From Octopus sinensis (taxonomy: Eukaryota), in contig NC_043003.1 of the NCBI RefSeq assembly GCF_006345805.1, forward strand, positions 83,204,001 to 83,268,000: a stretch of DNA of 64,000 nt. The letters run 5' to 3'. The translations under genes and the position numbers were made by a program. The notes beneath the pieces are model-generated. The model saw only the letters and a list, made by a program, of their open reading frames with translations, was not told the DNA's origin and did not search any database. Positions 451 through 47,240 of this stretch are shown in pieces (the first letter of the stretch is position 1; the number at the start of each line of letters is the position of its first letter).

Positions 451-680
451 GGCGGCGAGCTGGCAGAATCGCTAGCGCGCCGGGCAAAATGCTTAGCGGT
501 ATTTCGTCTGTCGTTACGTTCTGAGTTCAAATTCCGCCGAGGTCGACTTTATCTTTCATCCTCTCGGGGTCGATAAATAAAGTACCAGTTTCGCACTGAG
601 TCGATGTAATCGACTTAATCCCTTTGTCTGTCCTTGTTTGTCCCCTCTATGTTTAGCCCCTTGTGGGTAGTAAAGAAATA
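451..680 (+). mobile_element. tRNA-derived SINE family A, young full-length copy with Tx1-like tail
   Basis: Head GGCGGCGAGCTGGCAGAATCG, B-box-like GAGTTCAAATTCC, central GGTCGACTTT..TTTCATCC..GGGGTCGATAAA (Deu/Nin-like), tail GCCCCTTGTGGGTAGTAAAGAAATA; many homologues in the window. Confidence 0.9.
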
Positions 681-1225: not shown

Positions 1226-1480
1226 CAGGCGCGTGGCTTAGCGATTAGGGTGGTGGACTCCCAATCGTAAAATTGTGGCTTCGATTCCTGGACCAGGCGA
1301 CGCGTTGGATTCTTGAGCAAAACACCTCATTTTGCGTTGCTCCAATACACTCAGCTGGCAAAAATGAGGACTCCTGTAACGGACCGGCGTCCTGTCCAGG
1401 TGGGGAATATATAAACCATGGAACCGAGAAAACGGCCCTTATTAGTCGCTATGATTTGAGAAGGTGACTTTACCTTTAAT
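1226..1480 (+). mobile_element. tRNA-derived SINE (B/C group, V-domain-like body)
   Basis: A/B-box-like head, CTTGAGCAAAACAC core, GGACCGGCGTCCTGTCCAGGTGGGG module shared with 42763 and 63409 copies. Confidence 0.7.
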
Positions 1481-1834
1481 TTTTGGTATCTAATTTATAG
1501 TGAGCAAGGCAATCTAAACAATTACGATATATGTTCCAGCTGTAGCCAGTTCGTTTTCATTTCTTTCCTTGTTATTGAGCATGTTTTGCAAAGTGTAGGT
1601 TTAGCAAACACCGCTATTAACATTCCATCTAATTCTATTCTAAGTTATTCTCTACCTTGTTATTTTTCCTAGCGGAAAATGGTTGTGTATCAAGAAATTT
1701 ATGGACCTATGTCTAAAAAATTATCATCATCATCATCGTTGCCGCCGAAGTCATCTTCGTCACCGCCGACGTCATCTTCGTCGCCGCCGACGTCATACTC
1801 ATCGTCATACTAGGGAATTTTCGTGGGGACACAC

Positions 1835-2376
1835 TAGGGAATTTTCGGTCCATAACTTTGCTAAACACAGAGTTTAAGATTTTGGCCAAGATGTTAGAGA
1901 CAATGTTGGCGCCTGTCATTGGTAGTATAGTAGGAGAAGCACACATATGCGCAATCCCGAACAGGTCTATTCGCGACAACCTCCACCTTATGCAATACAT
2001 CGTAGAGAGAGCTGGGACTAAAGGTGGCTCCAGTGGGGCACTGATCAATTTGGATCAATCAGAAGCATTCGATAAGGTAGACCATCGTTATCTGGAAGTC
2101 GTCCTTAAAGCGGTCAGTTTAGGACCCATTTTCGTGGGCTGGATCGATTAAATGCACAACGCCACCTGCTCGGTGGTCAAATTAAGTGGTCATCTATCGG
2201 AATCGTTTAGCATCGCACGCCCGGACTGTCAGTGTTGCCCGATGTCACCTCTTCTGTACATGCTGGCTCTCGCGTCACTGTTGCGGAAGTTGGAACTATT
2301 CAGGGGCATCTCTTTCGAACTGGGACTCGGAAGAGCAGTGACTGCATATGCGGATGACTTCATGATGGTGTCTTAG
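1835..2376 (+). pseudogene. Tx1/L1-clade non-LTR retrotransposon reverse transcriptase fragment
   Basis: NFRSITLLNTEFKILAK, IPNRSIRDNL, LINLDQSEAFDKVDHRYL, CPMSPLLY, AYADD motifs in one frame with an in-frame stop at 2149-2151. Confidence 0.9.
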
Positions 2377-5120: not shown

Positions 5121-6449
5121 GTAGAAGTAAGAGTTGTTAACTTAATTGACTCTAATACCTTACTAATTACCTATTTTATCAGTCCGGTAAGAATTGAAGA
5201 TAATGTCAGCCAGAACGAAATACGAACTTTAAAGCCATGTTGCTAAATTTAGAAAATTAGAGCCTTTCATTTAAAGTTATTCACAACAACTAATGAAAGT
5301 ATTTAATCGACTGTATCGACCGCCCAAACAATTTCTTGGCATGAACATACGATAGACGTGATTACTTACGAAAATATTTCTGAATTAATAAGCGTTTCAA
5401 ATTTCGATACAACGACTGAGATTTTGAATATATTTTATTTCATTGTTCCCGAAATGAGAAAATGCGAAGTTGAGCTCTGCGGGATTTGAAATGAACGCGT
5501 AAATTGACTGGAAAAATACTACAAAATATTTCAACGTGCGGTCTAATAATTCTGTTAATCGACCATATATTTCTGAATTAATAAGGAAGTCAAGCTATAG
5601 TAAGCAAGAGATGTCGGGTCTAGCAGAACAATGTGACAGTTTCGTCTGTTTTGAATATCAAAGATTTCTTTGTTCTCTACTATATCGTCGAGCAAACACA
5701 CCACTTATCTCGTTAATTATAGGACCTGTATGTTATTCTTCCATTATTTAGTTTCAGTGTTTAATGAAACAGGGTATCTGTTCGTCACACAAATATTGTG
5801 ACCGTTGAGATTGACATCCTCATTCACCCTTGAACAGCAAGTAGCGTTAATATTCGTTTAAAATTCAAAGCCGTAGTTTCTTGCCTAAGGAAACCAAGGA
5901 TACACTACTCTCAATAAATTACACGAACACCAGTATTTGACTGGTATTTTATGTAATTGACACCTTAAAGCGGAAATACAAATTAGACCCAGGTGGTATT
6001 TGAAATCGGAACAAAAATGTAGATACCTAAAATGTACTAGGAATTTGTCTGACGTTTTAACGATCCTACCTTCTAGCAGTTTCGGTTGACCAAGCAGCTC
6101 GCATTTCATATCTTTCTTATTAGGGTTTGAGTAATTTAAAGCTTGTAGCACAAACTCACCTAACCAATTTTATATCGCCTCCACTTCTCATAAAATCTCT
6201 CTGTCAGAATTTATTCTCAGTATTAAAAGTAAACATGACATAACTTTATACTCTATACTGTAAATTATCATCGTCAAATTGTCACGGTAGACATTTAAAT
6301 TTCTTGAATCAACATTTCTTATATCCAATCTTTATTTTGACAGACATAATATTTACTGCTTTGAGGAAAGCCTAATCTCGTGGGAAAATTAATTATTACG
6401 TAATTCATATAAATTTAATACCTTTTACTCTTCAGACTTTTCTTTTCAG

Positions 6450-12144: not shown

Positions 12145-12371
12145 CGCGCGCACGTGTGTGTCTGTCTGTGTTTATACATTCACGCGTGTGTTTGTACGTG
12201 TGCGTGTATATGTGTGCGCGTGTGTATGCAATATTTTGGCGTTCCTACCAAAGTGGGAGAATATTCTACAACAGCTTTTGGAAGACTTTTAACTTATCTA
12301 CTATAATATCTAACAGAAGGGAAGTTTCAAAAACTTACACAAATTCTTCTCGTGTAGTTTAATTCAATATA

Positions 12372-12850
12372 CAGGGGTTGCACACAATAATGGAAACACC
12401 TTAAAATTGCAAACAATTTATTTTGATATGGTGTAGGACCGCCTTTGACAGTAATTATAGCTTGAGTTCTACGACGTAAGGACTCGGACAAAGTTTGAAT
12501 TCTTTCCAAATTACTTTCCGTCCATTCTTCAGCTAAATTCTCCAGTTCTTGTAGTGATGATAGTGGAGGATATCGACTCTTTACTTGTCTTTCTAAAGTG
12601 CACCATAAATGTTCAATCATATTGAGGTCTGGAGATTGTGGCGGCCACATAAGATGTTCGATTTCACAAGAGTGCTCCTCGTGCCATTCAGTAACAACGT
12701 TAGCAGCGTGAATTGGTGCATTATCATCCTGAAAGATTTCGTTTCCTTCCGGAAACTGTTCCGCAAACATAGGATGAATTTGATCCGATAAAATGCTTAA
12801 ATAATCTTGACTATGAATTCTGCAATGAAAGGAATCTATTGAGCCGGCGG
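12372..12850 (-). mobile_element. Tc1-family (DD34E) transposon 3' fragment with one TIR
   Basis: IFQDDNAPIH, WPPQSPDLNMIEHLW and KGGPTPY motifs; TA-CAGGGGTTGCACACAATAATGGAAACACC terminus. Confidence 0.9.
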
Positions 12851-18050: not shown

Positions 18051-18056
18051 AAATAC

Positions 18057-18286
18057 CTATTTCTTTACTACCCACAAAGGGCTAAACACAGAGGAGACAA
18101 ACAAAGACAGACAAACGGATTAAGTCGATTGCATCGACCCCAGTGCGTAACTGGTACTTAATTTATCGACCCCGAAAGGATGAAAGGCAAAGTCGACCTC
18201 GGCGGAATTTGAACTCAGAACGTAACGGCAGACGAAATACGCTACGCATTTCGCCCGGCGTGCTAACGTTTCTGCCAGCTCGCCGC
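18057..18286 (-). mobile_element. SINE family A, young copy with Tx1-like tail
   Basis: Near-identical to 451-680 in reverse complement. Confidence 0.9.
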
Positions 18287-20883: not shown

Positions 20884-21083
20884 ATAACGATCCTTTCTAC
20901 TAAAAGCATAAGGCCTGAAATGACACACCCCAAAAGTTTCACTGGTACTTAGTTTTAGCGACCACGAAGTGATGAAAAGCAAAGTTGACCTCAGCAGAAT
21001 TTGAACTCAGAACATAGCGACAGGCGGAATAACGCTAAACTTCTCGTCCTCCGTGCTACTGATTCTGCCAACTCGCTGCCTTC
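20884..21083 (-). mobile_element. SINE family A, old copy with alternative tail
   Basis: Degenerate head and core, tail containing AGGCCTGAAA on the + strand. Confidence 0.7.
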
Positions 21084-22487: not shown

Positions 22488-23673
22488 GAGGGCATTATAC
22501 ATACATGCCAAACGCTAAGAGGGACAATTAGTCATTTCTACCAAAAATATACTAATCCCACCGAATGCAATTTTTCAAAGTAAGACATTTAAAAAAATAT
22601 AGACCTGTATCACAGTGATTTCATACTTACGTACTCATCAGCAGCCTGAATGTATTATAATAAACAACGACCCTGCCCCGCTTAAGCCGATCAGCTAACT
22701 GCTCGACATCAACGAAGCACATGGGTGAGTTTACATATATTACATCATCGGATAAATGGCAAACTTTTACGAATTGCATTTCGGGAGAGGAAAAGTTTTT
22801 TCGGAATAAAAATTTAGCAATTAAGGACAACTACTTAATAAGGAAAACTTAACAAGAAATGTCAGGTAGATAGCGTAAAAACCTCATAAGAGAAAAAATT
22901 TCGAAAAAATTATTTCTTATTGAACATATTAATTTATATATAGAGGGCATTATACATACATGCCAGAAGGCATTATACATACATGCCAAACGCTAAGAGG
23001 GACAATTAGTCATTTCTACCAAAAATATTACTAATCCCACCGAATGCAATTTTTCAAAGTAAGACATTTAAAAAAATATAGACCTGTATCACAGTGATTT
23101 CATACTTACGTACTCATCAGCAGGCCTGAATGTATTATAATAAACAACGACCCCTGCCCCGCTTAAGCCGTTCAGCTAACTGCTCGACATCAACGAAGCA
23201 CATGGGTGAGTTTACATATATTACATCCGGATAAATGGCAAACTTTTACGAATTGCATTTCGGGAGAGGAAAAGTTTTTTCGGAATAAAAATTTAGCAAT
23301 TAAGGACAACTACTTAATAAGGAAAACTTAACAAGAAATTGTCAGGTAGATAGCGTAAAAACCTCATAAGAGAAAAAATTTCGAAAATAATTATTTCTTA
23401 TTGAACATATTAATTTATATATAGAGGGCATTATACATACATGCCAGAAGGCATTATACATACATGCCAAACGCTAAGAGGGACAATTAGTCATTTCTAC
23501 CAAAAATATTACTAATCCCACCGAATGCAATTTTTCAAAGTAAGACATTTAAAAAAATAGACCTGTATCACAGTGATTTCATACTTACGTACTCATCAGC
23601 AGGCCTGAATGTATTATAAATAAACAACGACCCTGCCCCGCTTAAGCCGATCAGCTAACTACTGCTCGACATC

Positions 23674-25373
23674 TATTTCTTTATACCCACTAGGGGCCAC
23701 GAAGAGGGAACATTACAAAACATGGGGGACATAAAAAATGCGATTAAAATTATGATTAAATGAATGTTAAAATGAAAAAAATGATAACATGAAAGCGATG
23801 CTAACGGCCCCCTCCGCCAGCATCACTTACCTTTCCGTTTCCTATCACGATTCCAAAGTTTTTTCACCTCACCTTTCATTTTTCTCTCATATCTCTCTAT
23901 CATATCATCCTTCATAAATGCTGTTATACAATTTATACGTAGTTCATTGCACTTGCTCATCAAAGAGCCCATGAGTTCAAAATCGAATACCGCATAACTT
24001 CCGTCCTCATACTCCTGACATACATCGTCTTCAAATAGCCTTCTTGCGTTCTCAGTATCCCCCTTCCCCACAACACATAAAAAGTAGGACTGGGGCTTTT
24101 GTATGTTTCTGTGTGTCTGTTTTCGTTTTCTTGTAGGCGGGGAGTGGGTGGGATTGCTGTTTGCGGGGGCAGGATGGGTCTCCAAGGGTGTGGGTGGTAT
24201 TGGGGTGGGTTGGGGCTTCGCGCACAGTTTTTCTTTTCTTTCCTTTTCTCTTCTTTCTGCCTCCTCACACTCTTTTTGCATCTCCTCCTCCTCTGTCATT
24301 TCCCTTTCCGTCTGCTTCTCTTTAATTTCTTCTTCTTTTGGGGCCTCCTCTTTTGTAGTTTCCTCAACGATTTCCTTTTCTCTTGTGGGGGGGGGGCAGA
24401 AGCTCTTATGTGGCCCCTCAGGCCACACTTGTAACAACGTGGAGCTCTGCCCTCCACCCACACTCTCATAATCACGTCTCCCAATTTAATGCTCTCCGCC
24501 AGGTCCACCAGTACCTCGCTCTCCGCCTGCACGTTCAGCTCCACTATTACGCCGCCTCTCCAGCCCTCGGTCTTGACCGAGGCATGAAGAATCTACTTTC
24601 TCTTCTCCTCGTGGTCGCTGATCACAGCCGCCACAATCCACTCAGCCTCCACGTTTGGTGGCACTCCCTCCACCCTTACTCGTGTGATCCTTCTATTCAA
24701 GTACATAGGTAAAAGTGTTACCCTTTCTGACTTCACCGCCTTCACCGCCATCCTCCTCGCTGCAGTCTCACTTTTAAAATGCACCACTACAGTACCGTAC
24801 TTCGATCCTCGAGTCAGAAAAATGATTTCCTCCTACCATCTTCTCAGGGCCTCCTCTATCCATTCCATGTTTACGATCTCTATTTTCTTTCTATCGTTCA
24901 CGAACACCCTGTAAATTATGGTCCTCTTATTGTACCATTCCTTTCTTTGGTGGTGGTTCCAGTTCCACCTCGCCGCTGTCCTTCCTCATATACCTCTGGA
25001 AACCTGGCAATTTTTCTAGGTTTATTTCTTTTTCCTGTTCCGTCTTCTTTTTTGCAACTCCTGCGTACGTTTTCCTGTTTTTTGTCTCCACATTATTTAC
25101 ATCACCGATTTGCTCGTCTTCAGAGTTCGATGTCTCCGACAAGCTCTCAAATATCCATTCTTCCTCCGACTCCTCCACTAGGTAGTGGTCATCCATTTCC
25201 TCCGCCTGACAGGCCAAAACGGCCGTCAAAACAGAAAAAGTGTTACGCGCAGAACCAGTGGAACGCGAAACCGCTTTAACGCCTTTTAAAATTACCACAA
25301 CAACAACAATTCTTTTTGATCTTTTTTTACCGAATTTTACGAGCGTAAAAAAACACGACCGAACTCAAACTGA
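23674..25373 (-). mobile_element. Full-length ORF1-only (HAL1-like) non-autonomous retroposon related to Tx1/L1 clade
   Basis: TSD CGATCAGCTAACTGCTC..CATC (23648-23673 and 25374-25396); 5' end TCAGTTTGAGTTCGGTCGTG; disrupted ORF with RKTYAGV, RRM-like segments and VEGRAPRCYKCGLRGHIR knuckle; ~150 nt 3' UTR; no RT or endonuclease. Confidence 0.85.
23823..25196 (-). pseudogene. Gag-like ORF1 (~457 codons) with 2 frameshifts and 2 stops: acidic N-terminus, RRM-like, CCHC knuckle, Glu/Lys-rich, Pro-rich, C-terminal domain
   Basis: Stitched from ORFs 24927-25298, 24593-24787, 24296-24544 and 23823-24461. Confidence 0.8.
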
Positions 25374-26706
25374 CGATCAGCTAACTGCTCAGCATCAACG
25401 AAGCACATGGGTGAGTTTACATATATTACATCCGGATAAATGGCAAACTTTTACGAATTGCATTTCGGGAGAGGAAAAGTTTTTTCGGAATAAAAATTTA
25501 GCAATTAAGGACAACTACTTAATAAGGAAAACTTAACAAGAAATTGTCAGGTAGATAGCGTAAAAACCTCATAAGAGAAAAAATTTCGAAAATAATTATT
25601 TCTTATTGAACATATTAATTTATATATAGAGGGCATTATAATAATATGTTCAATAAGAAATAATTATTTTCGAAATTTTTTCTCTTATGAGGTTTTTACG
25701 CTATCTACCTGACATTTCTTGTTAAGTTTTCCTTATTAAGTAGTTGTCCTTAATTGCTAAATTTTTATTCCGAAAAAACTTTTCCTCTCCCGAAATGCAA
25801 TTCGTAAAAGTTTGCCATTTATCCGGATGTAATATATGTAAACTCACCCATGTGCTTCGTTGATGTCGAGCAGTTAGCTGATCGGCTTAAGCGGGGCAGG
25901 GTCGTTGTTTATTTATAATACATTCAGGCCTGCTGATGAGTACGTAAGTATGAAATCACTGTGATACAGGTCTATATTTTTTTAAATGTCTTACTTTGAA
26001 AAATTGCATTCGGTGGGATTAGTAATATTTTGGTAGAAATGAATAATTGTCCCTCTTAGCGTTTGGCATGTATGTATAATGCCTTCTGGCATGTATGTAT
26101 AATGCCCTCTATATAAATTAATATGTTCAATAAGAAATAATTATTTTCGAAATTTTTCTCTTATGAGGTTTTTACGCTATCTACCTGACAATTTCTTGTT
26201 AAGTTTTCCTTATTAAGTAGTTGTCCTTATTGCTAAATTTTTATTCCGAAAAAACTTTTCCTCTCCCGAAATGCAATTCGTAAAAGTTTGCCATTTATCC
26301 GGATGTAATATATGTAAACTCACCATGTGCTTCGTTGATGTCGAGCAGTTAGCTGATCGGCTTAAGCGGGGCAGGGTAGTTGTTTATTTATAATACATTC
26401 AGGCCTGCTGATGAGTACGTAAGTATGAAATCACTGTGATACAGGTCTATATTTTTTTAAATGTCTTACTTTGAAAAATTGCATTCGGTGGGATTTTGGT
26501 AGAAATGACTAATTGTCCCTCTTAGCGTTTGGCATGTATGTATAATGCCTTCTGGCATGTATGTATAATGCCCTCTATATATAAATTAATATGTTCAATA
26601 AGAAATAATTATTTTCGAAATTTTTTCTCTTATGAGGTTTTTACGCTATCTACTACCTGACAATTTCTTGTTAAGTTTTCCTTATTAAGTAGTTGTCCTT
26701 AATTGC

Positions 26707-30806: not shown

Positions 30807-31018
30807 GGTGAGCTGGCAGGATTATTAGCACGTCGGACAAAATACTGAGTAGCATTTCTTCCGGCACTGTACATTCTGAGTTCAAATGCCGCTAAGGTCG
30901 ACTTTGCCTTTCATCCTTTCGAAGTCAATGAAATAAAGCACCAGTTGAGCAGAGGGGTCGATGCAGTTGACATCCCCATCCCTTTAAAATCGTTGGCTTT
31001 GTGCCAAAAATTTAGAAA
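30807..31018 (+). mobile_element. SINE family A, old copy with alternative tail
   Basis: Head and core homology; tail GGCTTTGTGCCAAAAATTT. Confidence 0.75.
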
Positions 31019-31398
31019 GATTACACGTATGTATGTATGTATGTATGTATTACGCAAGTATGCATGCGTCTGTGTGTGGTGTATCCTTTTATACATGTGT
31101 GTATGTATGCGTTCATCTTCTCGCCTGCTTTCATTGGCGGTTCCTCTTTCTTTGTTCTTCTGTCTATGTCTGTTTATCTCCTTCACAGTATCTTTCTTCT
31201 ATCTATCTATCTTTCTATCACACTATCTGTTCGTTCAGTCACTTATCTGTTCATTTCTCCTCCAGCTATTTGCGGTTTCCCCTTCTTTATATTTTTATTA
31301 CTTCCTTTATATCGCGTATATCTTCCTGTCCTCTCTCTTCTTCTTCTCTCTTTTCTCTTATTCTCATTCTTTATACCTTTCTCTCTCTTTCTTTTCTG

Positions 31399-31455
<57 letters not shown>

Positions 31456-32569
31456 AACACATCTATGTGTGTCTGTAAGTCTGCGTGCTTGTGTGATACA
31501 AACGCCATCATTACGCTTTTATTTCCTTTCAGGTTCAGCAAAACATCGAAATAAATGCTTTGCAGAATTTAGTTACGGATTTTTATGTTCTAAATTCGAA
31601 TCTCACCGAGGTCGACTTAACCTTTCATATTTCTGGTGTCAATTGAATAATTGTTTCAAAGCTTGACAAAAGTCCAGCAGTTTTAAGGGAGTGAATAAGT
31701 CGATTACAACTCAAGCATTCATTCAAGTAGTACTTATTTTATCGACTCCGAAAGGATAGGTTAAGTTGACCTCAGGGAAAATTGAAGTCAGAACGTAAGG
31801 AGCCGGAAGAAATGCCACTAAGCACTTTGTCCGACTTGGTAACAATTCTACCAGCTCTTCGCCTGAGGAGTCAATTTAATAATACAAAACTATGTTTTCA
31901 CATAACAAATGTTTTCGTATAAGAGTTATACTGAAAATATATAAGTGTCTCTTTTAAGATGAGTTTTACATACTTAGAATACACAACACAAAAAAAGGAG
32001 GAAGCAGAAAAAATTCACATATTATTTGCAGGTTTTCGCATAGAAAGAGGTTTTAGTGAATAATCCCTAGTGCATATCGAAAACTAAAGAGAATATATAC
32101 TAGAAGAAAAATCGTTCAAATTACCAGTTTTTAGCTGTTTTTCGCTGTTTTTTTGCTGTTTTTCACTGTTCTTTGAATTTTCGCTGTTTTTCAGTTTACC
32201 AACGTTGTGTGTGTTTCCTCCATTATATCTAAAGACTATGTGGTCTTATATACGTATATGTGTGAGTGTATATCTGTGTGTGTGTGTGTATGTGTACATA
32301 CATGCAGATAGTTAGCAGACATACAGACGGATATATAAAGTCAAAAGTGAAAGCTGTGCCCAGGAACCCTCCCCAAAGTATCTGAGACTGGCAGGGATAA
32401 GGATCCTCAATGCAGAAACCTGACACGAAATGATGAAATTGCACAGCCGACATTTGTGGAATTTGAACTCAGATCGTAGAGATTCGGAAGAAAAGCCGCA
32501 AAGCATTTTGACCGACCTACATTTGATTTTCCTTGCTTTACTGTCTTAGAATATAAATGATGACATAAA

Positions 32570-33202
32570 GAATCTTTTCAACTAAAAGTACAAGGCCTGA
32601 AATTTTATGGGGAGAGGATAGTTGAGTATATTGAGCCCAGTGCTAAATTTTTTCTTAGAAAATGTGAATGGCAAAGTCGTCCTTGGTGACATTTGACTCA
32701 GAACATAAAGATAGACGAAATACCTATTTCTTTACTACACACACGAGGCTAAACACAGAGAGGACAAACAAGGACAGACAAATGGATTATGTCGATTATA
32801 TCGACCCCAGTGCGTAACTGGTACTTAATTGATCGACCCCGAAACGATGAAAGGCAAAGTCGACCTCGGCGGAATTGGAACTCAGAACGCAGCGGCAGAC
32901 GAAATACCTATTTCTTTACTACCCACAAGGGGCTAAACACAGAGAGGACAAACAAGGACAGACAAACGGATTAAGTCGATTATATCGACCCCAGTGTGTT
33001 ACTGGTACTTAATTTATCGTCCCCAAAAGGATGAAAGGCAAAGTCGACCCCGGCGGAATTTGAACTCAGAACGTGACGGCAAACGGCTACGCATTTCGCC
33101 CGGTGTGCTAACGTTTCTGCCAGCTCGCCGCATAAATAATGATAATAATAATAATGGTTTCAAAGCATATTGCCCAACACGCTAACGGATGTGCCAGCTC
33201 GA
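32570..33202 (-). mobile_element. Nested cluster of SINE family A: two young copies between the head and body of an old copy
   Basis: Junction GACGAAATAC|CTATTTCTTTACTAC at ~32721 and ~32906; orphan head remnant at 33160-33202. Confidence 0.85.
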
Positions 33203-33733: not shown

Positions 33734-33784
<51 letters not shown>

Positions 33785-34514
33785 TTTACTAGATGCACAA
33801 GGTCTGAAATATGGGTGAGTGGGATAGACGATTACATCGGTGTTAGTACTTATTCTACCGACCCTGAAAAAATGGAATGCATAGTGGACCTCGGCGGAAT
33901 TTGAAATCAGAACGTAAAGACGAATGAAATGCCGATGAGTATTTTGCCAAGCATGAAAACGATTCTGTCAGCCTGCTGCCTTAATAATAATAATAATAAG
34001 AAGAAGAAGAAGAAGAAGAAGAAGAGTTCAAATAACATAGAGAAGAAGAGTAGTATGTCGGAGAAATTGTAATTGACATGAGGGTTGATCAAGCTCAAGA
34101 AACTAATTCTCATAGAATTGACCGAGGATATTTACCCCTTGACTGGCAGATTTAGAAAGTAACTTCTTGTAGCTAAACACTTTCGTATACTGGTTGAGCG
34201 TGTCATATAAAAACTTTTACTCTTAGCGTTTTTGAGAAAAGTTTATGTTTACGAAGTTATTTAACGTTAAAGTTCTCGTATTTCGGTAATTTCAACCAAT
34301 CAAGGACGTGTATTCAGATGAATAAAATTACTGCCGTTGTTTGTCAACAACAACTGCTATTTATGACATATTTCATCTCAGTTATGTTTGTATGAATAAA
34401 CGAGTGAATCTGAAGCATGCCATCACCAGAATCGTTTGTGTATTTCTATTGCTTTTAGTTTTTTCCCTGTTTTTCAGCTACTATTTTTGGAAAATCTTTT
34501 TTACCTCCCCTACC

Positions 34515-36739
34515 CCTGCTGACAATTACAGACCAATATGTTGCTACCTGTTAATGTGGAAGTTACTATCAGAGTCTTTAGCGGGGGCATAACTTTATGT
34601 TATGATGAGACCCAAACTGCAAAATGGATGCAGCACAACATATTGAACGTAGTCCCATCCACAAGGGACAGTAGCATGATGGGTCGAAACGACCGTTGTA
34701 CAAACTAAAGATTTACACCAGTTAAGAACTGTACAAATTTCTTGATGTGAACGATATATTACCGGCGGAACAAAAAGGCTGTAGAAGGAGATGCAGGGGT
34801 GCCAAAGATGAATGTTTGATAGACAAACAGTAATGCAAGATTGTAAACGAAGAACACATTTGGGAATGGTCTGGATTGATTATCGCAAAGCTTATGATAC
34901 GATTCCACATTCGTGGATTATTGAGTACCTGTATCTGTTTGGAAATGCGAGGAATGTAACGTGTTTCCTGAAGATAAGTATAGTGTGGTAGAAAGTTGAA
35001 CTGATACGTTACGGGAAAAGGTTTGGCACCCTGGGTATCAGAAGAGGGATTTTCCAGGGTGATAGATTATCTCCGCTGCCTTTTATTCTCTGTATGATAC
35101 CCCTGACATTGTTACTTAGGAAAATGAGCCTGGGATACTAACTAAAGGGAAAAAAAAAACAATCAACCACCTCCTCTTGGACGATTTGAAACTGTATGTC
35201 AGAGATGAGACACAAGGGAGTTCGTTAGTGAACACTGTCCATAGTTTTAGTACTGATATTAGAATGGAATTTGAATTCAAGAAGTGCGGAATAGTCTACC
35301 CAAAAAGAAGTGAGGTATAGTCCCAATGGGGGATAGAATTACCAAATACAGACTTGATTAAGCAAATTGAAACGGAAGGCTACAAATACCCTAATACCCT
35401 GTTTTACTAGAGTTCAACGAGATATTGGAGAAGGAAATGAAAGACCAACTGAGGATGGAGTATTTCCGAAGACTAAGGTTGGTGTGCGCTCAAAATTGAC
35501 TGCATGGAATAAAATGCAAGCAGTTAATACGAATGCGATAGCATCACTTCGGTATGGAGCGGGAATTATAAAATGGCAAAAAAAGATAAGTGGTGAAAAT
35601 GAATACCAAGACCAGAAAAATTTTGACAGTACACGGAGCCTTCCACCCTAGGAATGACACCTATAGGCTGTGCTTGTCCAGAAGAAAGGGTAGGAGAAGT
35701 TTGATCAGTTGCCAGGACTGTGTCGAAGCAGAGGAAAACAGCTTCGGGTGGTATTAAAAAATGCCGTGGAGCCATTGTTGAAACATACTAAGAAGGCCGA
35801 CATCATCAAAACTGAAAATTGTGTAAGGAAAGAAATATTCATCTCTTAAATATAGAACTGTATTATCTAAAGAAAAATATAAGCAAGAAATGAATGCAAA
35901 AACAGAAAAAGCATGGAAAAAATATGTACGGTCAGTTTGCAGGAGATGTGAACGCGAAGACAGATAGCGGACCGGTGGCTATGGATGAGGAGGAATGACT
36001 TGAAGATAGAGACAGAAGTACTCATATGTGCAGCTCAAGAACAGGCGTTAAGGACCAACTATATAAAGTGCAGAATAGACAACACTACCGACAGCGACGA
36101 ATGCAGAATATGTGGGGAGAGGGGTGCATCGGTATGCCCGAAGTTGGCACAACACGAATATAAAAGACGCCATGACATTGTGGCATGCATGATCCATTGA
36201 GATGTCTGTAGAAATCACGGCCTACAAAGAGCAAAGGCGTGGTATGAACAAACACCACAAGGAGTAACCGGGAATGAGAATTGCAAAATCCTGTGGAATA
36301 CAGTGATACAGTGCGATCACCTCACCAGACATCGGAAACCGGACATTGTTGTAGTGAATAAAATAGAAAGAACATGCATGGTAATCGACATAGCATGTTC
36401 CGGTGACAACAAGATCAATGTGAAAGAAGAAGAAAAAATAAACAACTATGACGATTTGAAGCGGGAAATACGAAGGTTGTGGTCAATGAGGTGAGTAGAC
36501 GTGATACCACTAGTAATTGGTGCACTTGGAAGTATCAGCACTCAACTATCAACACAGTTGAAAAAGATTGGTGCCAGTGTGGATGTATAACACCTTCAAA
36601 AATTAGCATTGCTTGGAATTGCAAGAATTCTTCGTAGAGTTCTTGAAGCATGACCAGTAAACAGGTGTCACCTTAGTCTGCTGGCTGTGGACAGCTAACA
36701 CTTTCCATCATACCCAGAAAAATAAGCTGTGAGTTTTCA

Positions 36740-37944: not shown

Positions 37945-38680
37945 GGTGTATTGGCTGAATTGTTAGAGTGTCGAACGAAATGCCTTGCAGTATTTATTGC
38001 GTTCCCCTTTCAAATCTCATTGAAGTTAACTTAGCTTTTCATTTTATCCGAGACTAATGAATAATGAAGGGGGCTAGTGTAGTGGATTGGTGGAAACTTT
38101 AGAAAGTCATAGAATAAGCTTCTGTATTTTCGGCACTTTGCATTCTCAGTTCAAATCCGTTTTTGCTTACTCAGGAGTCGACGAAATCCGTCGGCCGGTT
38201 TAGAATTTATTAATTTGGCTTTTGAAATGCTCTAGCGAATATTTTAGCCATCAGAGATAATTTGTTTATTATTATTATTATTCTCATCATTTATGCGTCT
38301 AGATGGCAAAATTGTTAGCACATAGGGCAAAATGTTTCACGGCTTTCCTGTCAGCTTTAGGTTCTGAGTCAAATGACACCAAGGTCGACTTTGCCTTTCA
38401 CGTTTTCTAAGAACCTCAGGCTTTGTGCCTGCAGTAGAAAGAATTATTATCGTCATTATTTGTATTTAAATGTAGTAAGCAGGCAGAATCGCTAACACGT
38501 TGGGCAAAATGCTTAGCAACTTTTCTTTCGACTCTCTACGACCTGATTTCAAATTCGACAAAGGTCAGATGTGCTTTTTATCCTTTCGGTATCAATAAGA
38601 GCCAGCTGAGCACTGAGGTCGATATCGACTAAACCTCTACCCCTAAAATCGCTCGCCTTGCGCCAAAATTTGGAATAATT
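37945..38680 (+). mobile_element. Cluster of degenerate SINE family A copies with alternative tail
   Basis: Repeated GGCAGAAT..GTTAG heads, GGTCGACTTTGCCTTTCA cores, GGC(C/T)TTG(T/C)GCC tails. Confidence 0.7.
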
Positions 38681-41170
38681 ACTATTATGGTGATTATGAT
38701 CATCATTATTATTATTAAGACCATTAAGGTAGGTCATGGTTTGACATACACATTAAAGAGTCAACTTTCTTCTGGCTCTTTACTTTCTGACTTCAAAAGC
38801 ATATTTTATCAGCTTTGCCTTTCATCCTAGCGGATTCGATGTATAATATACCAGTCAAGAACGTGGATGCCCCCTCCTCAATGTGGTTGACTTTTACATA
38901 AATCAGAATGTATTATCATTAAGAATATCGGTTGGTATAATCGTGATATCGGTGAACAACATCATTTGCTGCAGTGCCAACGTTTCTTTACGTCTAAGTT
39001 AAATCCCACATCGTAGCCAAATCTATAAAATATATAGTAAAAAAGGATCCTGTCCGGATGCAAGGCCTGATGTCTGTCATGAAAATAGCGATTATTGAAA
39101 ACTGTCTCAACAGTAAATTAGAGTACTAAATATTTTGTATTGTTTGGATATCTCCTAGAATGGTGAATCAAATGTGTTTTTCATAGTTAATCACATACAA
39201 TATAGAGTAAACTAGTATTGTGATTGATATAATCGACTAACTCCATCTCCAAATGTAAGGCCTTACGTTTGTCATAAAAAGAATCGTCATTACTGAAAAC
39301 TGTATTAACTATGAATTATTTAGATATCTCCTTGAGTCGTAAATAAAATGTTTTGACAAAGTTAATCACATAGTTAGTCCACTTCTTTCAGATGTCCATT
39401 TCGCTTTTCGTCTTTCTGTACTTCATAAAGTACCAGTCAAATATTGGCCTCAATTTCAATGATCGTCATCACTCACTAAGTGGCCAATTGCCAGAATAGT
39501 TAGAACATCGGGGCAAACGTCTTTCACAATTTGTTCTGGTTCTTTTCAGTCTGAATTCAGATCCCTCTGTGGGCAACGTTGCTTTCATGATCGGGGATCG
39601 ATAATATAGTGTATCAGTATAGACCCTTAGATTAACGGAATTCTTAGTATGTTGGACAAATTGTGATTTTTGTTCCGGACTTATACGTTTTAATTACCCA
39701 GGCAGGTATGATGAGGGTGTCTATATTTACCCGACAAGTTGGTACCATATATGAATAATGATAACAGGAGACCACTTTTGTGTTCTTCTACGAATATTCC
39801 ACGACAAGAATATAACGTTTGTCAAGAAAATCAGTGCGGTCGTTCGGCGACTAGATACTGATAAAAGAAAAGACACCATTCTTAGAAAGTGTTTAAACAT
39901 GTGACAAAGATAAGGAAAGGACGCATTATATTTAGTATTGTTGAAATGCCAAACATTTGAAATTCTAACTTGAATAAGACATTTTTATAGTAACAAATAT
40001 CTGAAAACATTCTCTGCCAAAATATGAAAATATATCGTATGTGGGAGATGTCAACTATTTCATGCAATACGATGATTCACATAAAGTATTTCTATTTGTG
40101 AATAATATATATCTATCAACAATATTAATATTCATGTTGTGATATATCTTGCATCAAACAAACAAAAACTCTCGCATATAGGATTAATGGAACTCTTATC
40201 TACTAATTGTTTGATTCATCTTGTATATTCTAAATGGATAGGATTTCACTGTAAAAGACTTTGTGTCTCGATTTCATGTTTTATTCAACATATATCAGCA
40301 ACCCACATATTTGCTAGAAGTGTGAAGCGGTTATATTGTTATTATCTCAGATAGAACGTCAACAACTAAGTCTTTGTATTCGCTTATAAATGGCACTATT
40401 TTCAGTGAATCAAATCTGTTTGCTCCTCTACTAGCTTTCTATAGTTGTAATTGGTTCTCGGAGTGATAAAATATCAGAGAATATGCCGTAGGTTTTGGTC
40501 AAGTGCATTGTGTGCAGTGTTAAGCTTCTCAACCAAATAGTGACTGAAGATGTAACACTAAATTGCGTTATCCTCACAAGTCATCTAAGTGTTATTTGAC
40601 AAATTTAAACAGGAGTCCTATTTACAGGAAAATCAATCTTTTCTCACTAACTAAAGATTCGGCAGTCTTAGCGCCTGCTTTATAAGACACACTGACTTGT
40701 AATGTCGTTGATTGATTTTATAAATTTAGTAAAGAGAAAAGCCTGAAGCAGTAACAACCATTTTATATATTATTGTTTTTTTCAATAACTCCACACCGGA
40801 CATCTTGTTGATGTTAACATAATAAACATGGAGTATGTCAACGTTGACTTAAAATCTAATGATTGGATAGATAATGGCAGAGAAAATCATTCACATAATT
40901 AATTGTAATGGACGTATTTGAAAACATTGTCAACAAGTAAATGTATTTAGAACAGCTTAGTCTCGTACCACACAGTCCTCACAATCACATAGCCGTAGGA
41001 AAGATTGAACCTAGATTTGAGAGCTAAGAAAACGGTCGTCAAGTTCCTGCTGATATTACTCCTCGTCGTAAATAATAAAAAAATAATTCATTTTACGCTT
41101 TGGAACTTGGTTTACAGTTAAACTATAAAATAAATCATCGACGTTAATGAATCAGTGTTGCTGTACATAA

Positions 41171-41844
41171 GAGGAAGAAACTAAAGAAGAAGGGAACCAA
41201 ACAGAAAAGGAAACGACAGAAGAAGAGATCCAGCAAGAGTGGGAAGAAGGAAGGAAAAGAAGAAAGAGAAGAAGGAGAAAAGCAAACAGTACGGAACTCC
41301 AATCCACCCCAAAACCACCCGCACCCTCTGAGTCCCACCCGTCCCCTGCAGACAGTGAAGCTACCCACTTTCCACCAACAAGAAAACAGAAAAAAGATAC
41401 ACACAGTCAAGACACTAAAAAAGAACCCAGGCCCAACGTTTTATGTATTGCAGGAAATGAGGAGATAAAAAAGACAATGACGGACTACCGATGGTGTAAT
41501 AGGGGAGGGAAAAGATGTGCAGTAATTCCAAAGGAACAAGTGGATGAGTTTATGGAAAGGTGCGAAAGGATGGACTGGAGAATAATTGAAGTGGATATGG
41601 ATGAAGAGACGGTGAAGGAATTTGAAGAGAGATTTGAGAGAAGGATAGAGGTGAAGGCATATTATATTGAGACTGAGCAAGACTGAAGGACAGGTAAGTG
41701 ATGCTAGCGGATGGGGCCGTTAGCACCACTTTCATATATCATTTTCATTGATTCATTTTACCCATAACTATGTAATTGTGATGTTCTATGTCCCCAATGT
41801 TTGTAGCGTCCCCTCTATGTAGCCCCTAGTGGGTAATAAAAAAT
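41171..41844 (+). mobile_element. 5'-truncated, divergent sister copy of the ORF1-only retroposon
   Basis: Open frame 41171-41686 homologous to the C-terminal part of the 23823-25196 ORF (QTEKETTEEE, HFPPTRKQK, LCIAG, MERCE); same 3' hairpin and tail. Confidence 0.85.
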
Positions 41845-41995
41845 CACAGTGTTGCTGTACAGCATCAGAACAACCGTGATCAAGCAGAATCAACATCAAA
41901 TCATATCACCTGAAACAATCCTTTTTTACAGACATCTACACACACAAAGCAATATATATATATATATATAGATAGATATAGATATAGATATAGAT

Positions 41996-43705: not shown

Positions 43706-44120
43706 AAGGAGTGGAGCTGGCAGAATCGTTAATGCGCCAGGTAAATTATTCGTCTTTATGAGCTGAGTTCAAATTCCACCGAGGTTCACTTTGCCTTTCA
43801 TGCTTTCGGGGTCGATAAAATAAGTACCAATCGAGCCCTGAGATCGATATAACCGATTTAAACCCTGCTCCGAAATTGCCAAAATCTTTAAATCATTATT
43901 ACTGGTCAAAGGAAGGCGGCAAGCGGGCAGACTCGCTAACGTGCCGGTCAAAATGTATTTCGTCCGTATTTACAGTCTGAGTTCAAATTCCTCCGAGGTT
44001 TACTTTACCTTCCACACTTTCGGGGTCGGTAAAATAAATACCAGTTGGGTACTAAGGTCGAAGTAACGGACTTACCCCTTCCCTGAAATTACTGGCCTTG
44101 TACTAAAATTTGAAACCGAT
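43706..44120 (+). mobile_element. Two tandem SINE family A copies with alternative tail
   Basis: Head, core and GGCCTTGTACTAAAATTTGAAA tail. Confidence 0.75.
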
Positions 44121-44473
44121 ATTATTGGCTAAAGGTAACTGGAAGTAGCAATTTGCATATAAGACCACGGATTAAAAAAATGAAAAGTCAACAGCGAAAT
44201 TTATTAACCGTATCGTTATATATATTCATATCAATAATGCGCGTTAAATCTACTCTGGAAATTCTTTTGGGGAATACTTGTTGCTGTTTCGTATCGTTAT
44301 TGCTTTGTTTTGTTGTTTAGACGCCTCAGACTTCATCAAGCATACGTGTAATAAAAAAATTTTCCCATCCATCCGGGCATTTTAAGAGTATACTGGAAAA
44401 CATTAACCAATGTTCCTGCCCCTTCTCCGATTAGATTGCGAATAGTAGCATCTCCCTCAGTTCACGTACAATC

Positions 44474-44709
44474 TGTTTCTTTATTGCCCACAAGGGACTA
44501 AACATAGAGGGAAACAAACAAGGACAGATAAACGGATTAAGTCGATTACATTGATCCCAGTGCGTAACTGATACTTAATTTATCAACCGCGAAACGATGA
44601 AAGACAAGGTCGATCCCGGCGGAATTTGAACTCAGAACGTAACGGCAGACGAAATACGACTACGCATTTCGCCCGGCGTGCTAACGGTTCTGCCAGCTCG
44701 CCGCCTTCG
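44474..44709 (-). mobile_element. SINE family A, young full-length copy with 14-bp TSD
   Basis: TSD GTTCACGTACAATC at 44460-44473 and 44710-44723; Tx1-like tail. Confidence 0.95.
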
Positions 44710-46262
44710 GTTCACGTACAATCGTCGAGAGAATGGGCGCTAAACTTGAATATAACTTATTAACATACAGAACGATAAAGGCTGGAAATCTTTTGACCAG
44801 TCTGTGAAGTCTAGTGTTATGTTAAACAACGGCAACTCTGACATCATCAATATTCTATTTTACTTTACTGCTTAAAACGCTAGTCGCTGCATCAAGAAAG
44901 TGTATTCATAGCGATCATAAACACCTCATTTTGTACTATCTCTTTCGCCGATCAGATTCATACTAATGCAAACCATTACTCGCCAACCAATTCTAAATTG
45001 TTCTAATTTTCTAGAGAAACACTTTTATTCCGAAAACATTATTTATAGTAATTTTATTTCATTTTCAACACCTTCAAGAATCATTCCGAGACTTTATTTA
45101 ATATATTTTATATTTCTTTGTCAATTTCTATTAGAAGAGTAGCACTCTAAGAAGTTTAACATCTTCACATAAATTTAGTCAATCTAACATTTCTTCGCAT
45201 TTTCTAACGTTTTTATCTATGCAAGTCTTTCTGTGTCTATATGTGCGTGTTTGTGTATGTATGTATGAATGTATATGCGCATATGTATATGTTAGTATGC
45301 ATGTATGTATGTATGTATGTATGTATGTATGTATGTATGTATGTATGTGTAGACAGATAGACAGATGACAGATAAAATAATTTTCACATCCAACTTAACT
45401 TGAATGTGTGTTAAAAAGGCCGTAAGCTGTGGTAATCGTCCTGAGAAATCGTCTCCTATAGACAAGAGACAAGCAATTACTATCCTTACAGAAAACCCAA
45501 CTAGGAAAATGTCTCTTAGACGCTTCAACTCCATTCAGTCCCAACTGTGATTCAGAGCCTAGTCTCAGACGTCAGCAGAAAAACCTTCACTATATAAGTG
45601 AACCGAGTGAGCTACTACAGGAGCCCACCCTGCTATAACGAGACAGTATCTAGAAGCTTCCTTACACTAGCTAAAATGTATTTCTCAGCTCTTTAATTCC
45701 CATAATTCTAAGGTTCCCTGCTTGTGATTAAATAATATCGCTTCCCTCATGTCATGCTACATCAGACGTACGCACAAACCCACCGGTTTCCCTTCTACAC
45801 TCTGCTGAAAACCTACCACAAAATGGCAAAATATACAACCCCTATTTATATGTCAGTCTTGCGAAGCTACTCTTAGCTGAAACCACCAAATCTGTTAACT
45901 GCCACGTGGTAAATGTTGTCAGTAAAGTATCATAAACTACAGAGCGATTACTATTTGACTAATTCACGCCAACGTTTTACCTACACTACTACGTGCATCA
46001 ACTAATATTAAGAATTAATGCCAATGGATACATCATTTTGCACAATGCCGATAATGTGCGCCAACATCTTGTCTACTCTAAAATGTGCATCTAGCAATAA
46101 AATAGCTGCGTCTATCATAGCAGAAAAAAAAACATCCACGTGACCTGAACAAACGAACGGAGGCTCAAATAACTTTCAAATTTCTTCTCACTTATGGCTT
46201 CGTTTCCGAAGAAAACAGGAGGTAGATGCGCAATTAACCAGACCCTGTCCAAACTGTTACGC

Positions 46263-46301
<39 letters not shown>

Positions 46302-46635
46302 CTGTGTGTGTGTGTGTGTTTGTGTGTGTGTGTAGTGTTAGAAGTGGTGTACAGATATTGTATCTTGAGAAAATGGAGGTAGTCAGAATTTTGGATAATC
46401 CTTTATTAGTGCTTTCGTTAGTTTTCGAACTCGTCAAGACAAAATCGAAATTAAAATGGTAAAAGCAGAAAGGTTCCTTGTTCATTTCTATGAATCAAAT
46501 GTTTTTGTTTTGTTTTGTTTTGAAAAGGAGAATATTGTTTTTGTTTTTTGAAAAAGGCGGGGAGAGAGAGAAAGAAAAGCAAAGCGGTGGGAGAATAGAT
46601 TGAGAAAGAGGCTTCAGGACAATCAAGAAAGAGAA

Positions 46636-46687
<52 letters not shown>

Positions 46688-46689
<2 letters not shown>

Positions 46690-47240
46690 CACAAACCACC
46701 TCCAGTGCTTGAAAATGATCACATCTCACTCCTCTGGAACTTCACCATTCAAACTGACAGAAAGATAGATGCAAATAGGCCAGACATCATATTGAAAGAA
46801 TTCAGACAAAAGTCATGCCTCCTCATTGATATGACTAACCCAATCGATATAAACATATCTGTCAAGACCTACCAAAAACTGAGCAAGTATAAAGATCTTG
46901 AAATAGATATTAGCAAAATGTGGAAGCTGAAGACTAAAACAATACCTGTTGTCATAGATGCCCTGGGAATGATAGCGAAAGGGGCTGATTGCTACCTAGC
47001 CCAGATACCAAGAAACCCCAAAATGCCAGAAATTCAAAATATAGTGCTCATGGGAACTGCTCATATCCTTAATTTTCTTATGGTTTCTTAAACATTCTCT
47101 AGAATAACACTATGTAGAAATGCAAATATATGACACCCTAGGCATAACACCAACATGAACTTCCAACTTGTTGTCTCTTGAGGTTTCTGGGTGAGACTTG
47201 GAGCCAACTTGTACAAATGTAAAGCAAATGACAAACATAA
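46688..47240 (+). mobile_element. R4/Dong-like LINE 3' fragment (restriction-like endonuclease) inserted in (AAT)n
   Basis: LLWNFTIQTDRKIDANRPDII, LIDMT.P, KLSKYKDLEI, IPVVI.ALG; AAT repeats on both sides. Confidence 0.9.

What the first reader, a model, noticed from the sequence alone, without database searches (positions are those of the whole stretch)
640..680. SINE family A tail matches the tail of the ORF1-only retroposon: a three-tier parasite set
Seen: SINE tail GTCCCCTCTATGTTTAGCCCCTTGTGGGTAGTAAAGAAAT versus GTCCCCTCTATGT--AGCCCCTAGTGGGTAATAAAAAAT at ~41807-41844 (35 of 40 aligned positions by my count), and GGCCCCTAGTGGGTATAAAGAAATA at 23674-23698 (-). Neither has poly(A), and both have TSD-bearing copies here (14 and ~23 bp). 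Known: stringent LINE-SINE pairs share 3' ends, but L1-clade elements usually rely on poly(A). Inferred: one Tx1-like RT recognises this tail and mobilises both the ORF1-only element and the SINE. The Tx1 RT relic at 1835-2376 may belong to that clade, but its tail is absent, so the link is unproven.
Basis: partly seen in the sequence, partly recalled or inferred. Interest (0 to 1): 0.8.

Follow-up and report, generated by a model that had tools for sequence, protein, structure and literature searches.

The report
SINE and ORF1-only retroposon share tail
A short mobile element and a 1.7-kb element that carries only the first gene of a LINE end in the same ~40-base tail with no poly(A), so one reverse transcriptase (probably from an L1/Tx1-type LINE that is not in this window) most likely copies both; this is a familiar parasite-on-parasite arrangement, not a new mechanism.

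Summary
SINE A (451-680) and the 5'-truncated ORF1 element (41168-41844) match at 35 of 40 aligned positions. The match runs to the last base of both, and shuffled sequence never comes close (score 52 against 18 +/- 2). The core motif AGCCCCTWGTGGGTA occurs six times in 64 kb, always at the 3' end of a SINE A copy or an ORF1 element. Target-site duplications follow the tail directly, and there is no poly(A). The 1.7-kb copy (25373..23674, minus strand) is a discrete insertion: it has a 23-bp duplication, and four empty paralogous sites lie in the same satellite. Its single decayed ORF is a complete LINE ORF1 (two RRM-like regions, a CCHC knuckle, a linker and a C-terminal domain). This ORF is homologous (E 1e-8 to 1e-12) to the ORF1 of intact APE+RT+zf-RVT LINEs from another organism, whose RT also resembles the window's RT relic. 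Those LINEs end in specific tails without poly(A). A model built only from their tails finds the tails of the window's other SINE families, but tail A only below threshold. No RT-bearing element with tail A could be found, because the source genome is in none of the searchable collections. The three-tier reading is therefore plausible but lacks its top tier, and "Tx1" was not tested. The closest analogues are HAL1 and stringent LINE-SINE pairs.

The parts
451..680 (+). SINE A, full copy. Head and core are shared with the window's other SINE families to about position 175. A family-specific 3' part of ~58 nt follows, and its last 42 nt (639-680) are the shared tail.
18058..18286 (-). SINE A, full copy (91% identical to 451-680). 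The tail ends at 18058.
32909..33131 (-). SINE A, full copy. The tail ends at 32909 and is followed directly by a 5'-truncated SINE A.
32725..32908 (-). SINE A, 5'-truncated copy (from about position 50) with a decayed tail. It is nested in another SINE.
44474..44705 (-). SINE A, full copy with a TSD. Its tail variant AGTCCCTTGTGGGCA keeps the small hairpin through two one-sided changes.
44706..44723 (.). Left TSD of SINE A 44474-44705 (GATTGTACGTGAAC + CGAA). The right copy is at 44456-44473.
23674..25373 (-). ORF1-only retroposon, full-length copy 2 (1700 bp). It has a 5'UTR and one decayed ORF1 (stops and frameshifts; two RRM-like regions, CCHC, an E/K- and P-rich linker, a C-terminal domain). 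AGGTAAGT lies at the stop, followed by a conserved hairpin, an AT-rich UTR and the tail at 23674-23715.
25374..25396 (.). Left TSD of copy 2 (GATGCTGAGCAGTTAGCTGATCG). The right copy is at 23648-23673. Empty paralogous sites are at 22671-22718, 23152-23199, 25854-25901 and 26329-26376.
41168..41844 (+). ORF1-only retroposon, copy 1. It is 5'-truncated within the ORF1 linker, its frame is open for 171 codons to the stop at 41684-41686, and it is 67% identical in DNA to copy 2. The tail is at 41807-41844.
41153..41167 (.). Left TSD of copy 1 (CAGTGTTGCTGTACA). The right copy is at 41847-41861.
1822..2376 (+). RT relic (RT motifs through YADD, one stop). It is L1-group-like and 42-47% identical to the ORF2 of the comparator LINEs whose ORF1 matches the ORF1-only element. 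It has no tail and no demonstrated link to the finding.

Best explanation
Two non-autonomous non-LTR retroposon families of this genome carry the same ~42-nt 3' terminus: (G)TCCCCTCTATGT(TT)AGCCCCT(T/A)GTGGGTA(G)TAAAGAAATA, with no poly(A). One is SINE A, a ~230-nt SINE whose head and core are those of the window's other SINE families and whose last ~58 nt are its own. The other is a HAL1-like 'half LINE' of ~1.7 kb that keeps a 5'UTR, a complete ORF1 and a ~150-nt 3'UTR but has no ORF2. The tail is most likely the element that a LINE reverse transcriptase binds and from which it starts target-primed reverse transcription (stringent-type recognition). One autonomous LINE, or a small set of close relatives, would then mobilise both families in trans. 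Because the half LINE's ORF1 belongs to an L1/Tx1-group LINE lineage (APE + RT + C-terminal zinc-binding domain), the driver is most likely a LINE of that group. The SINE would have gained the tail by template switching onto a transcript of that lineage. Shown: the shared terminal sequence, the TSDs, the ORF1-only architecture and the ORF1 homology. Inferred: recognition of the tail by an RT, a single common driver, and the clade of that driver.
For: Tail identity is confined to the termini of both families and lies far above chance. TSDs abut the tail in both families and empty sites exist. Copy 2 holds no RT or APE similarity between its TSDs. The two ORF1-element copies are only 67% identical yet share the layout ORF1 end, AGGTAAGT, hairpin, UTR, tail, so the ORF1-only layout belongs to the family and is not a one-off deletion. 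The ORF1 is homologous to the ORF1 of three intact LINE families: BLASTP E 1e-10, 2e-12 and 8e-8; tblastn on the window 2e-7, 7e-9 and 2e-5. The match is collinear through the RRM-like regions and CCHC, with a weak C-terminal-domain match at E 1e-3. Those LINEs encode Exo_endo_phos + RVT_1 + zf-RVT, and their best solved relative is human L1 ORF2p (2e-52, against R2 at 5e-23). They end without poly(A) in a conserved specific tail: a C-rich run, a GGC-loop-GCC hairpin and an A-rich end ...GAAATAAA. A covariance model built only from their tails has five SINE tails of this window as its top five hits (E 0.005-0.11). LINEs of this group therefore plausibly drive SINEs in this genome through specific tails. 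SINE A's tail aligns weakly with one of those LINE tails (CCCCTCTATGTTTAGCCCCTTGTG against CCCCCCCATTTTTAG-GCCTTGTG; 5 of 1000 shuffles score as high, before correction for the several tails compared). Literature: L1-Tx1 is among the recently active LINE groups in Octopus vulgaris (PMC13282606). HAL1 shows that ORF1-only L1 derivatives arise repeatedly (PMC5753468). Stringent L1-clade/SINE pairs exist but are rare (PMC3472496).
Against: No RT-bearing element with this tail was seen. All six tails in the window belong to SINE A or to the ORF1-only element. The source genome is not in the searchable collections. The LINE-tail model scores SINE A only at E 1.2 and 7.1 and does not find the ORF1-only tails. 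Direct alignments of the ORF1-only tails to the comparator tails are at chance level. The tail has no thermodynamic signal (z about -0.5) and only a 4-bp hairpin with no double compensatory change within the family. Tx1 was not distinguished from other L1-group lineages; the only informative name among the hits is a distant fungal 'transposon TX1' annotation. The seven insertion sites share no common target, unlike typical Tx1 elements. A LINE derivative can be a mosaic, so the clade of its ORF1 does not prove the clade of its tail.
Confidence: 0.55

Rival explanations
1. The tail belongs to a LINE of another clade that is active in such genomes (CR1, RTE or Dong/R4). The ORF1-only element is a mosaic: an L1/Tx1-type 5' part that acquired a foreign 3' end by template switching. 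A non-L1 RT would then mobilise it and SINE A.
For: No RT was found attached to the tail. The tails of the L1/Tx1-type comparators are not significantly similar to tail A. Classical stringent pairs are mostly non-L1, with only 3 of 58 pairs in the L1 clade (PMC3472496). CR1, RTE and Dong-R4 are recently active in O. vulgaris (PMC13282606).
Against: Two copies only 67% identical share the same ORF1-to-tail layout. This includes an AGGTAAGT motif at the ORF1 stop that the L1/Tx1-type comparators also have at their ORF ends. TSDs of 14-23 bp and an A-rich end like ...GAAATAAA fit the comparator LINEs. No short terminal repeats of the CR1, L2 or RTE kind are present.
Confidence: 0.22
2. The tail is shared by descent only. 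SINE A copied its 3' end from an ORF1-only (or parental LINE) transcript once, but the two families were amplified at different times by different RT lineages, so there was never one simultaneous three-tier system.
For: The SINE and ORF1-element tails differ consistently (loop CTTGT against CTAGT, and a 2-nt indel). The copies differ much in age: SINE A copies are 86-91% alike, the ORF1 copies 67%.
Against: A 42-nt tail kept at ~85% identity across families whose other parts are unrelated suggests continuing constraint by a similar RT. A sample of seven copies cannot resolve when each family was active.
Confidence: 0.15
3. The resemblance is chance, or comes from a fragment of SINE A that happens to lie next to an unrelated ORF1 relic.
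For: The tail is short and has no significant predicted structure.
Against: The alignment score is about 18 sd above shuffles and the motif count is 6 against 0.07 expected. Both ORF1 copies have the tail flush against their own TSDs, with shared family-specific differences from the SINE tail.
Confidence: 0.02

Closest known systems
HAL1 ('half L1') of mammals
   Same: It is a non-autonomous LINE derivative that keeps only ORF1 with its UTRs, forms its own subfamilies, and is presumed to be mobilised in trans by the parental LINE's ORF2 protein (PMC5753468).
   Different: HAL1 ends in poly(A) and uses the mammalian coiled-coil/RRM/CTD type of ORF1. The element here has no poly(A) and a specific tail shared with a SINE. 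Its ORF1 has RRM-like regions, one CCHC knuckle and a separate C-terminal domain.
Stringent LINE-SINE pairs with a common 3' tail (e.g. eel UnaL2/UnaSINE1, CR1- and L2-tailed SINEs)
   Same: The identity is restricted to the last few tens of bases, there is no need for poly(A), and the tail is taken to be the RT recognition site (PMC4176376 and PMC3747384 for the concept).
   Different: The RT-encoding partner has not been seen here. The known partner is itself non-autonomous. No terminal short repeats and no well-supported stem-loop are present.
Stringent L1-clade pairs (maize LINE1-1_ZM with ZmSINE2/3; Chlamydomonas L1-1_CR with SINEX-3_CR)
   Same: They are L1-group LINEs whose conserved specific 3' end is shared with SINEs (PMC3472496). 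This is the situation proposed here.
   Different: Those are plant and algal lineages and their LINE partner is known. Here the assignment to the L1 group rests on ORF1 homology alone.
Tx1-Mar LINEs and SINEU of crocodilians
   Same: A Tx1-clade LINE is proposed as the driver of SINEs (PMC4494074).
   Different: That link rests on a shared insertion target, not on a shared tail. No common target is seen here.
Octopus tRNA-derived CORE-type SINEs (OR2 and relatives)
   Same: SINE A shares its head and core with the window's other SINE families. Octopus genomes are reported to be dominated by tRNA-Core and tRNA-Deu SINEs, and OR2 is a CORE-SINE (PMC8967140, PMC4758252). Calling this core 'CORE-like' rests on my memory of the MIR/CORE consensus, not on a test.
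   Different: Membership was not verified: ARAGORN and Rfam find no tRNA in the head, and no reference SINE sequences were available. Tail A differs from the GGCCTTGTGCC-type tails of the sister families.

Membership tests
SINE (short non-autonomous retroposon) | Short (100-500 nt), non-coding, multi-copy, flanked by TSDs | tested here: met
   There are four full copies and one truncated copy, 86-91% identical and ~230 nt long. One copy has a 14/18-bp TSD.
SINE (short non-autonomous retroposon) | Head derived from a small RNA gene (tRNA), with pol III A and B boxes | tested here: inconclusive
   A B-box-like GAGTTCAAATTCC is visible. ARAGORN finds no tRNA, and Rfam gives no tRNA match even at E up to 10.
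Stringent LINE-SINE pair (shared 3' tail) | Sequence identity between the partners is confined to the 3' terminus | tested here: met
   The last ~42 nt match at 35 of 40 positions, and upstream similarity is at chance. This was shown between the SINE and the ORF1-only element.
Stringent LINE-SINE pair (shared 3' tail) | One partner encodes the reverse transcriptase | tested here: not met
   Neither tail-bearing family encodes an RT in this window. Genome-wide this cannot be tested with these tools.
Stringent LINE-SINE pair (shared 3' tail) | Mobilisation depends on the tail | not testable with these tools
   This needs a retrotransposition assay.
HAL1-like ORF1-only LINE derivative | The ORF is homologous to a LINE ORF1 | tested here: met
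   BLASTP gives E 1e-10, 2e-12 and 8e-8 against the ORF1 that lies directly upstream of APE+RT ORF2 in three LINE families, collinear through the RRM-like regions, CCHC and C-terminal domain. Pfam zf-CCHC scores E 0.005, below its cut-off.
HAL1-like ORF1-only LINE derivative | No ORF2 within a complete copy delimited by TSDs | tested here: met
   The 1700 bp between the 23-bp TSDs have empty sites for comparison. No RT or APE similarity lies inside.
HAL1-like ORF1-only LINE derivative | A parental LINE with the same 5' and 3' ends exists | not testable with these tools
   The source genome is absent from the collections.
L1/Tx1 group of LINEs (for the presumed driver) | The RT groups with L1/Tx1 in a phylogeny with reference clades | not tested
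   No reference RT set was available. Indirect evidence only: the comparator ORF2 has APE + RT + zf-RVT and its best solved relative is L1 ORF2p, and the window's RT relic gives L1 ORF2p 4e-12 against R2 6e-9.
Tx1 clade specifically | Insertion into a specific target sequence | tested here: not met
   The seven junctions have different flanks. Three SINE A copies are followed by GGTATTT, but at least two of these are nested in one locus.

The most novel reading that the evidence does not exclude
A stringent, poly(A)-independent lineage of L1/Tx1-group LINEs drives the large SINE load of this (probably octopod) genome through a family of related tails: a C-rich run, a small GC hairpin with a CUUGU-type loop and an A-rich end. 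One branch of that lineage has spawned both an ORF1-only 'half LINE' and SINE A. A conserved U1-complementary AGGUAAGU motif at the ends of ORF1 and ORF2 may have mediated the loss of ORF2. If so, an L1-group LINE in an animal would behave like the classical stringent clades, with a three-level parasite hierarchy.
Probability: 0.3. Interest if true: 0.6.

Novelty: new member of a known kind. Interest (0 to 1): 0.4.

Why it matters
If an RT-bearing L1/Tx1-type LINE with this tail exists, it would be one of the few animal cases in which an L1-group element recognises a specific 3' end instead of poly(A). A 2012 survey found only three L1-clade pairs among 58 SINE/LINE pairs (PMC3472496). It would also name a driver for part of the large SINE expansion reported for octopus genomes. 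In addition, it would give a natural pair of passengers, one with ORF1 and one without, for asking what ORF1 protein supplied in cis adds to trans-mobilisation. As it stands, the finding is a correct piece of transposon annotation, not a new mechanism.

Tried and rejected
- A protein search with the reconstructed ORF1 gave no hit at E up to 1e-3.
- Exact look-ups of two window ORFs found nothing on record.
- Scans for the tail in metagenome contigs (two patterns) and in prokaryotic genome contigs gave 0 matches.
- Full-text searches for tail and SINE strings, and a search of the supplements of the octopus LINE paper, found nothing relevant.
- Two paper look-ups were wasted because 'sine' matched 'sinensis'.
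- The RT-relic search returned only unnamed ENA/Logan proteins. Cluster look-up gave no names or organisms.
- The comparator contigs are not from the same genome: 45 kb of them hold no octopus-type SINEs and no tail A.
- Tail structure is weak: RNAalifold finds only a 4-bp hairpin without double compensatory changes, and folding energies are ordinary.
- I considered that tail A is a stem-flipped version of the GGC-CUUGU-GCC hairpin of the comparator LINE tails and the sister SINE tails. It stays a lead only. Pairwise tests against the sister SINE tails give z up to about 2. Covariance models place SINE A at E 1.2-3.5 and miss the ORF1-only tails.
- Ka/Ks between the two ORF1 C-terminal halves was uninformative: 0.26 in the low-complexity linker and ~1.2 in the C-terminal domain, with an uncertain alignment.

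Full report
**Observation.** A Smith-Waterman comparison of each full SINE A copy with each ORF1 element always picks the extreme 3' ends of both. For SINE 451-680 against copy 1 the alignment is 640-680 with 41807-41844: 35 identities in 40 columns and a score of 52. Five hundred shuffles give 18.2 +/- 1.9 with a maximum of 27. Against copy 2 the last 42 nt align with a score of 41 against 19.8 +/- 2.1. The sequence just upstream of the tail is no more alike than shuffled sequence.

The core motif AGCCCCTWGTGGGTA, with up to two mismatches, occurs six times in the window where 0.07 are expected. The six sites are the ends of four SINE A copies and of the two ORF1 elements. A fifth, 5'-truncated SINE A copy (32725-32908) has a decayed tail that falls outside this pattern. 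None of the ends carries poly(A).

**Both families are retroposed units.**
- SINE A at 44474-44705(-) is flanked by GATTGTACGTGAAC, 14 perfect bases or 18 with two mismatches.
- ORF1 copy 1 (41168-41844) is flanked by CAGTGTTGCTGTACA.
- ORF1 copy 2 (25373..23674, minus strand) is flanked by a 23-bp duplication of GATGTCGAGCAGTTAGCTGATCG. It lies in a satellite, and four other units of that satellite carry the target uninterrupted. The 1700-bp unit is therefore a single discrete insertion.

In every case the tail runs up to the duplication. The two ORF1-element tails also share differences from all SINE tails: the loop is CTAGT rather than CTTGT, and 2 nt are missing. The tail therefore belongs to that family and is not a stray SINE fragment.

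**What the longer element is.** Copy 2 has about 175 nt of leader, then one reading frame broken by stops and frameshifts. The frame encodes:
- an acidic N-terminus;
- two RRM-like regions;
- the knuckle CYKCGLRGHIRASC (Pfam zf-CCHC E 0.005, below its cut-off);
- an E/K-rich then P-rich linker;
- a C-terminal domain of about 85 residues.

The stop lies within or next to AGGTAAGT. A conserved 15-bp hairpin follows, then an AT-rich stretch, then the tail. Copy 1 is truncated inside the linker and keeps an open frame of 171 codons to the same kind of stop. It is only 67% identical to copy 2 in DNA and 40% in protein. The layout of ORF1, short UTR and tail is therefore old and belongs to the family.

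No RT or endonuclease similarity lies between the duplications. The large protein database holds nothing similar to this ORF at E up to 1e-3.

**Which kind of LINE it comes from.** The window's RT relic (1822-2376; RVT_1 E 2e-16) led to eukaryotic contigs in two ENA assemblies. These carry three intact LINE families. Each has an ORF1 of 546-719 residues directly upstream of an ORF2 of about 1155 residues with Exo_endo_phos, RVT_1 and zf-RVT. The best solved relative of the ORF2 is human L1 ORF2p (2e-52), well ahead of R2 proteins (5e-23).

Their ORF1 has the same order of parts as the window's ORF: RRM-like, RRM-like, CCHC, low-complexity linker, C-terminal domain. It is homologous to the window's ORF as follows:
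- BLASTP E 1e-10, 2e-12 and 8e-8 for the three families;
- tblastn against the window E 2e-7, 7e-9 and 2e-5;
- a second, collinear match in the C-terminal domain at E 1e-3.

The window's ORF is therefore a whole LINE ORF1 of an L1-group lineage, and the element is an ORF1-only derivative, the invertebrate counterpart of mammalian HAL1 (PMC5753468). I could not separate Tx1 from the rest of the L1 group, because no reference set was at hand. The only informative name among the hits is a distant fungal 'transposon TX1' annotation. L1-Tx1 is the L1-group label used for recently active LINEs in Octopus vulgaris (PMC13282606).

**Do LINEs of this lineage use specific tails?** A solitary 5'-truncated copy (L005) defines the end of comparator family 1 as ...CCCCCAAAACCTCAAGGCCTTGTGCCTTCTGTGTAATATACGCAGAAATAAAA, followed by unrelated flank and no poly(A). 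Family 2 ends ...CCCCATTTTTAGGCCTTGTGCCAAATTTGTATATATTTATACAATAAATAA. The third family has GGCTATATGCC in the same place. These LINEs therefore end in a C-rich run, a small GC hairpin and an A-rich terminus.

In an alignment of these six ends with seven SINE tails of the window, the closing pair of the hairpin covaries (AU, UA, CG, GC).

I built a covariance model from the six LINE ends alone. Its five best hits in the 64-kb window are exactly the tails of five SINE copies of the families that share SINE A's head and core (E 0.005 to 0.11). The literature already records rare stringent L1-clade pairs (PMC3472496).

**Where the chain stops.** Tail A is not significantly recognised by that model: SINE A scores E 1.2 and 7.1, and the ORF1-only tails are not listed. 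One pairwise alignment to the family 2 tail is suggestive. CCCCTCTATGTTTAGCCCCTTGTG aligns with CCCCCCCATTTTTAG-GCCTTGTG, and 5 of 1000 shuffles score as high, before correction for the several tails compared. In that alignment the hairpin has the same CUUGU loop with two stem pairs flipped. The ORF1-only tails do not reach significance against the comparator tails. The tail also has no energetic or within-family covariation support.

Above all, no RT-bearing element with tail A was seen. The window has none, and the source genome is absent from every collection I could query. The seven insertion sites show no common target. That does not favour a classical site-specific Tx1, although the sample is small.

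**Verdict.** The reading 'one RT recognises this tail and moves both' is the best explanation and follows the standard logic of shared-tail pairs. It is now backed by the ORF1 homology and by the tail behaviour of the related LINEs, but the autonomous tier and its clade remain inferred. The case is a new member of known kinds (a HAL1-like half LINE and a shared-tail SINE), not a new mechanism. That the window comes from an octopod is my inference from the SINE content and from published descriptions (PMC8967140). It was not verified.

Noticed in passing
window 44071-44119(+), 30972-31020(+), 38631-38679(+), 38396-38444(+), 20890-20938(-), 33779-33827(-), 32572-32620(-); L003 8124-8183, L005 9102-9162, L007 7112-7174: SINE families that share SINE A's head and core have a different tail: CCCC..AAAA..GGCCTTGTGCC.., often ending in ATT repeats. 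A covariance model built only from the 3' ends of L1/Tx1-type LINEs of another organism ranks five of these SINE tails as its top five hits in the window (E 0.005-0.11). The closing pair of the hairpin covaries. This suggests that LINEs of that group, rather than RTE, partner these SINEs.
   Followed up: partly
window 41693-41699(+), 23825-23831(-); L003 3987 and 7482, L001 8651, 12059 and 18541, L005 4987 and 8482, L007 6502: AGGTAAGT, a perfect match to the U1 snRNA 5' end, lies at the ORF1 stop of both ORF1-only copies. In comparator LINE family 1 it lies right after the ORF1 stop and again 14 nt after the ORF2 stop. A deletion or template jump between the two copies of the motif would produce exactly an ORF1-only element. 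Its function is unknown.
   Followed up: partly
window 41696-41731(+), 23793-23826(-): A conserved ~15-bp hairpin (GTGATGCTRGCGG-loop-CCGTTAGCAYC) starts the 3'UTR of both ORF1-only copies. It is far better conserved (~93%) than the rest of the element (67%).
   Followed up: no
window 18051-18057, 32902-32908, 32718-32724 (minus strand): Three SINE A 3' junctions are followed by GGTATTT. At 32560-33201 two SINE A units sit one after the other inside another SINE, at the homologous position (about position 50). This could reflect a target preference, homology-assisted 5' joining or tandem duplication.
   Followed up: partly
window about 22500-26500: A tandem and partly inverted satellite of ~480-bp units hosts ORF1-only copy 2 and supplies four empty-site paralogues.
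   Followed up: partly
L003/L004 (ena:ERZ21867824:ctg88761c), L007/L008, L001: The comparator LINEs lie in head-to-tail tandem arrays (units of ~6.8 and ~6.6 kb). In L001 a 57-nt tail-only copy (5827-5883) is flanked by the direct repeat GGAAACAAGGGA, and the same sequence follows the full LINE at 12750. This may be a target preference or LINE 5'-end sequence.
   Followed up: no
window 34824-35150(+), 12327-12770(-), 46600-47091(+), 712-1180 and 1226-1470(+): Other repeats in the window: a second weak RT relic, a mariner-type transposase relic, a 163-codon ORF that resembles the C-terminal part of another LINE type, and two further tRNA-like SINE families next to SINE A.
   Followed up: no
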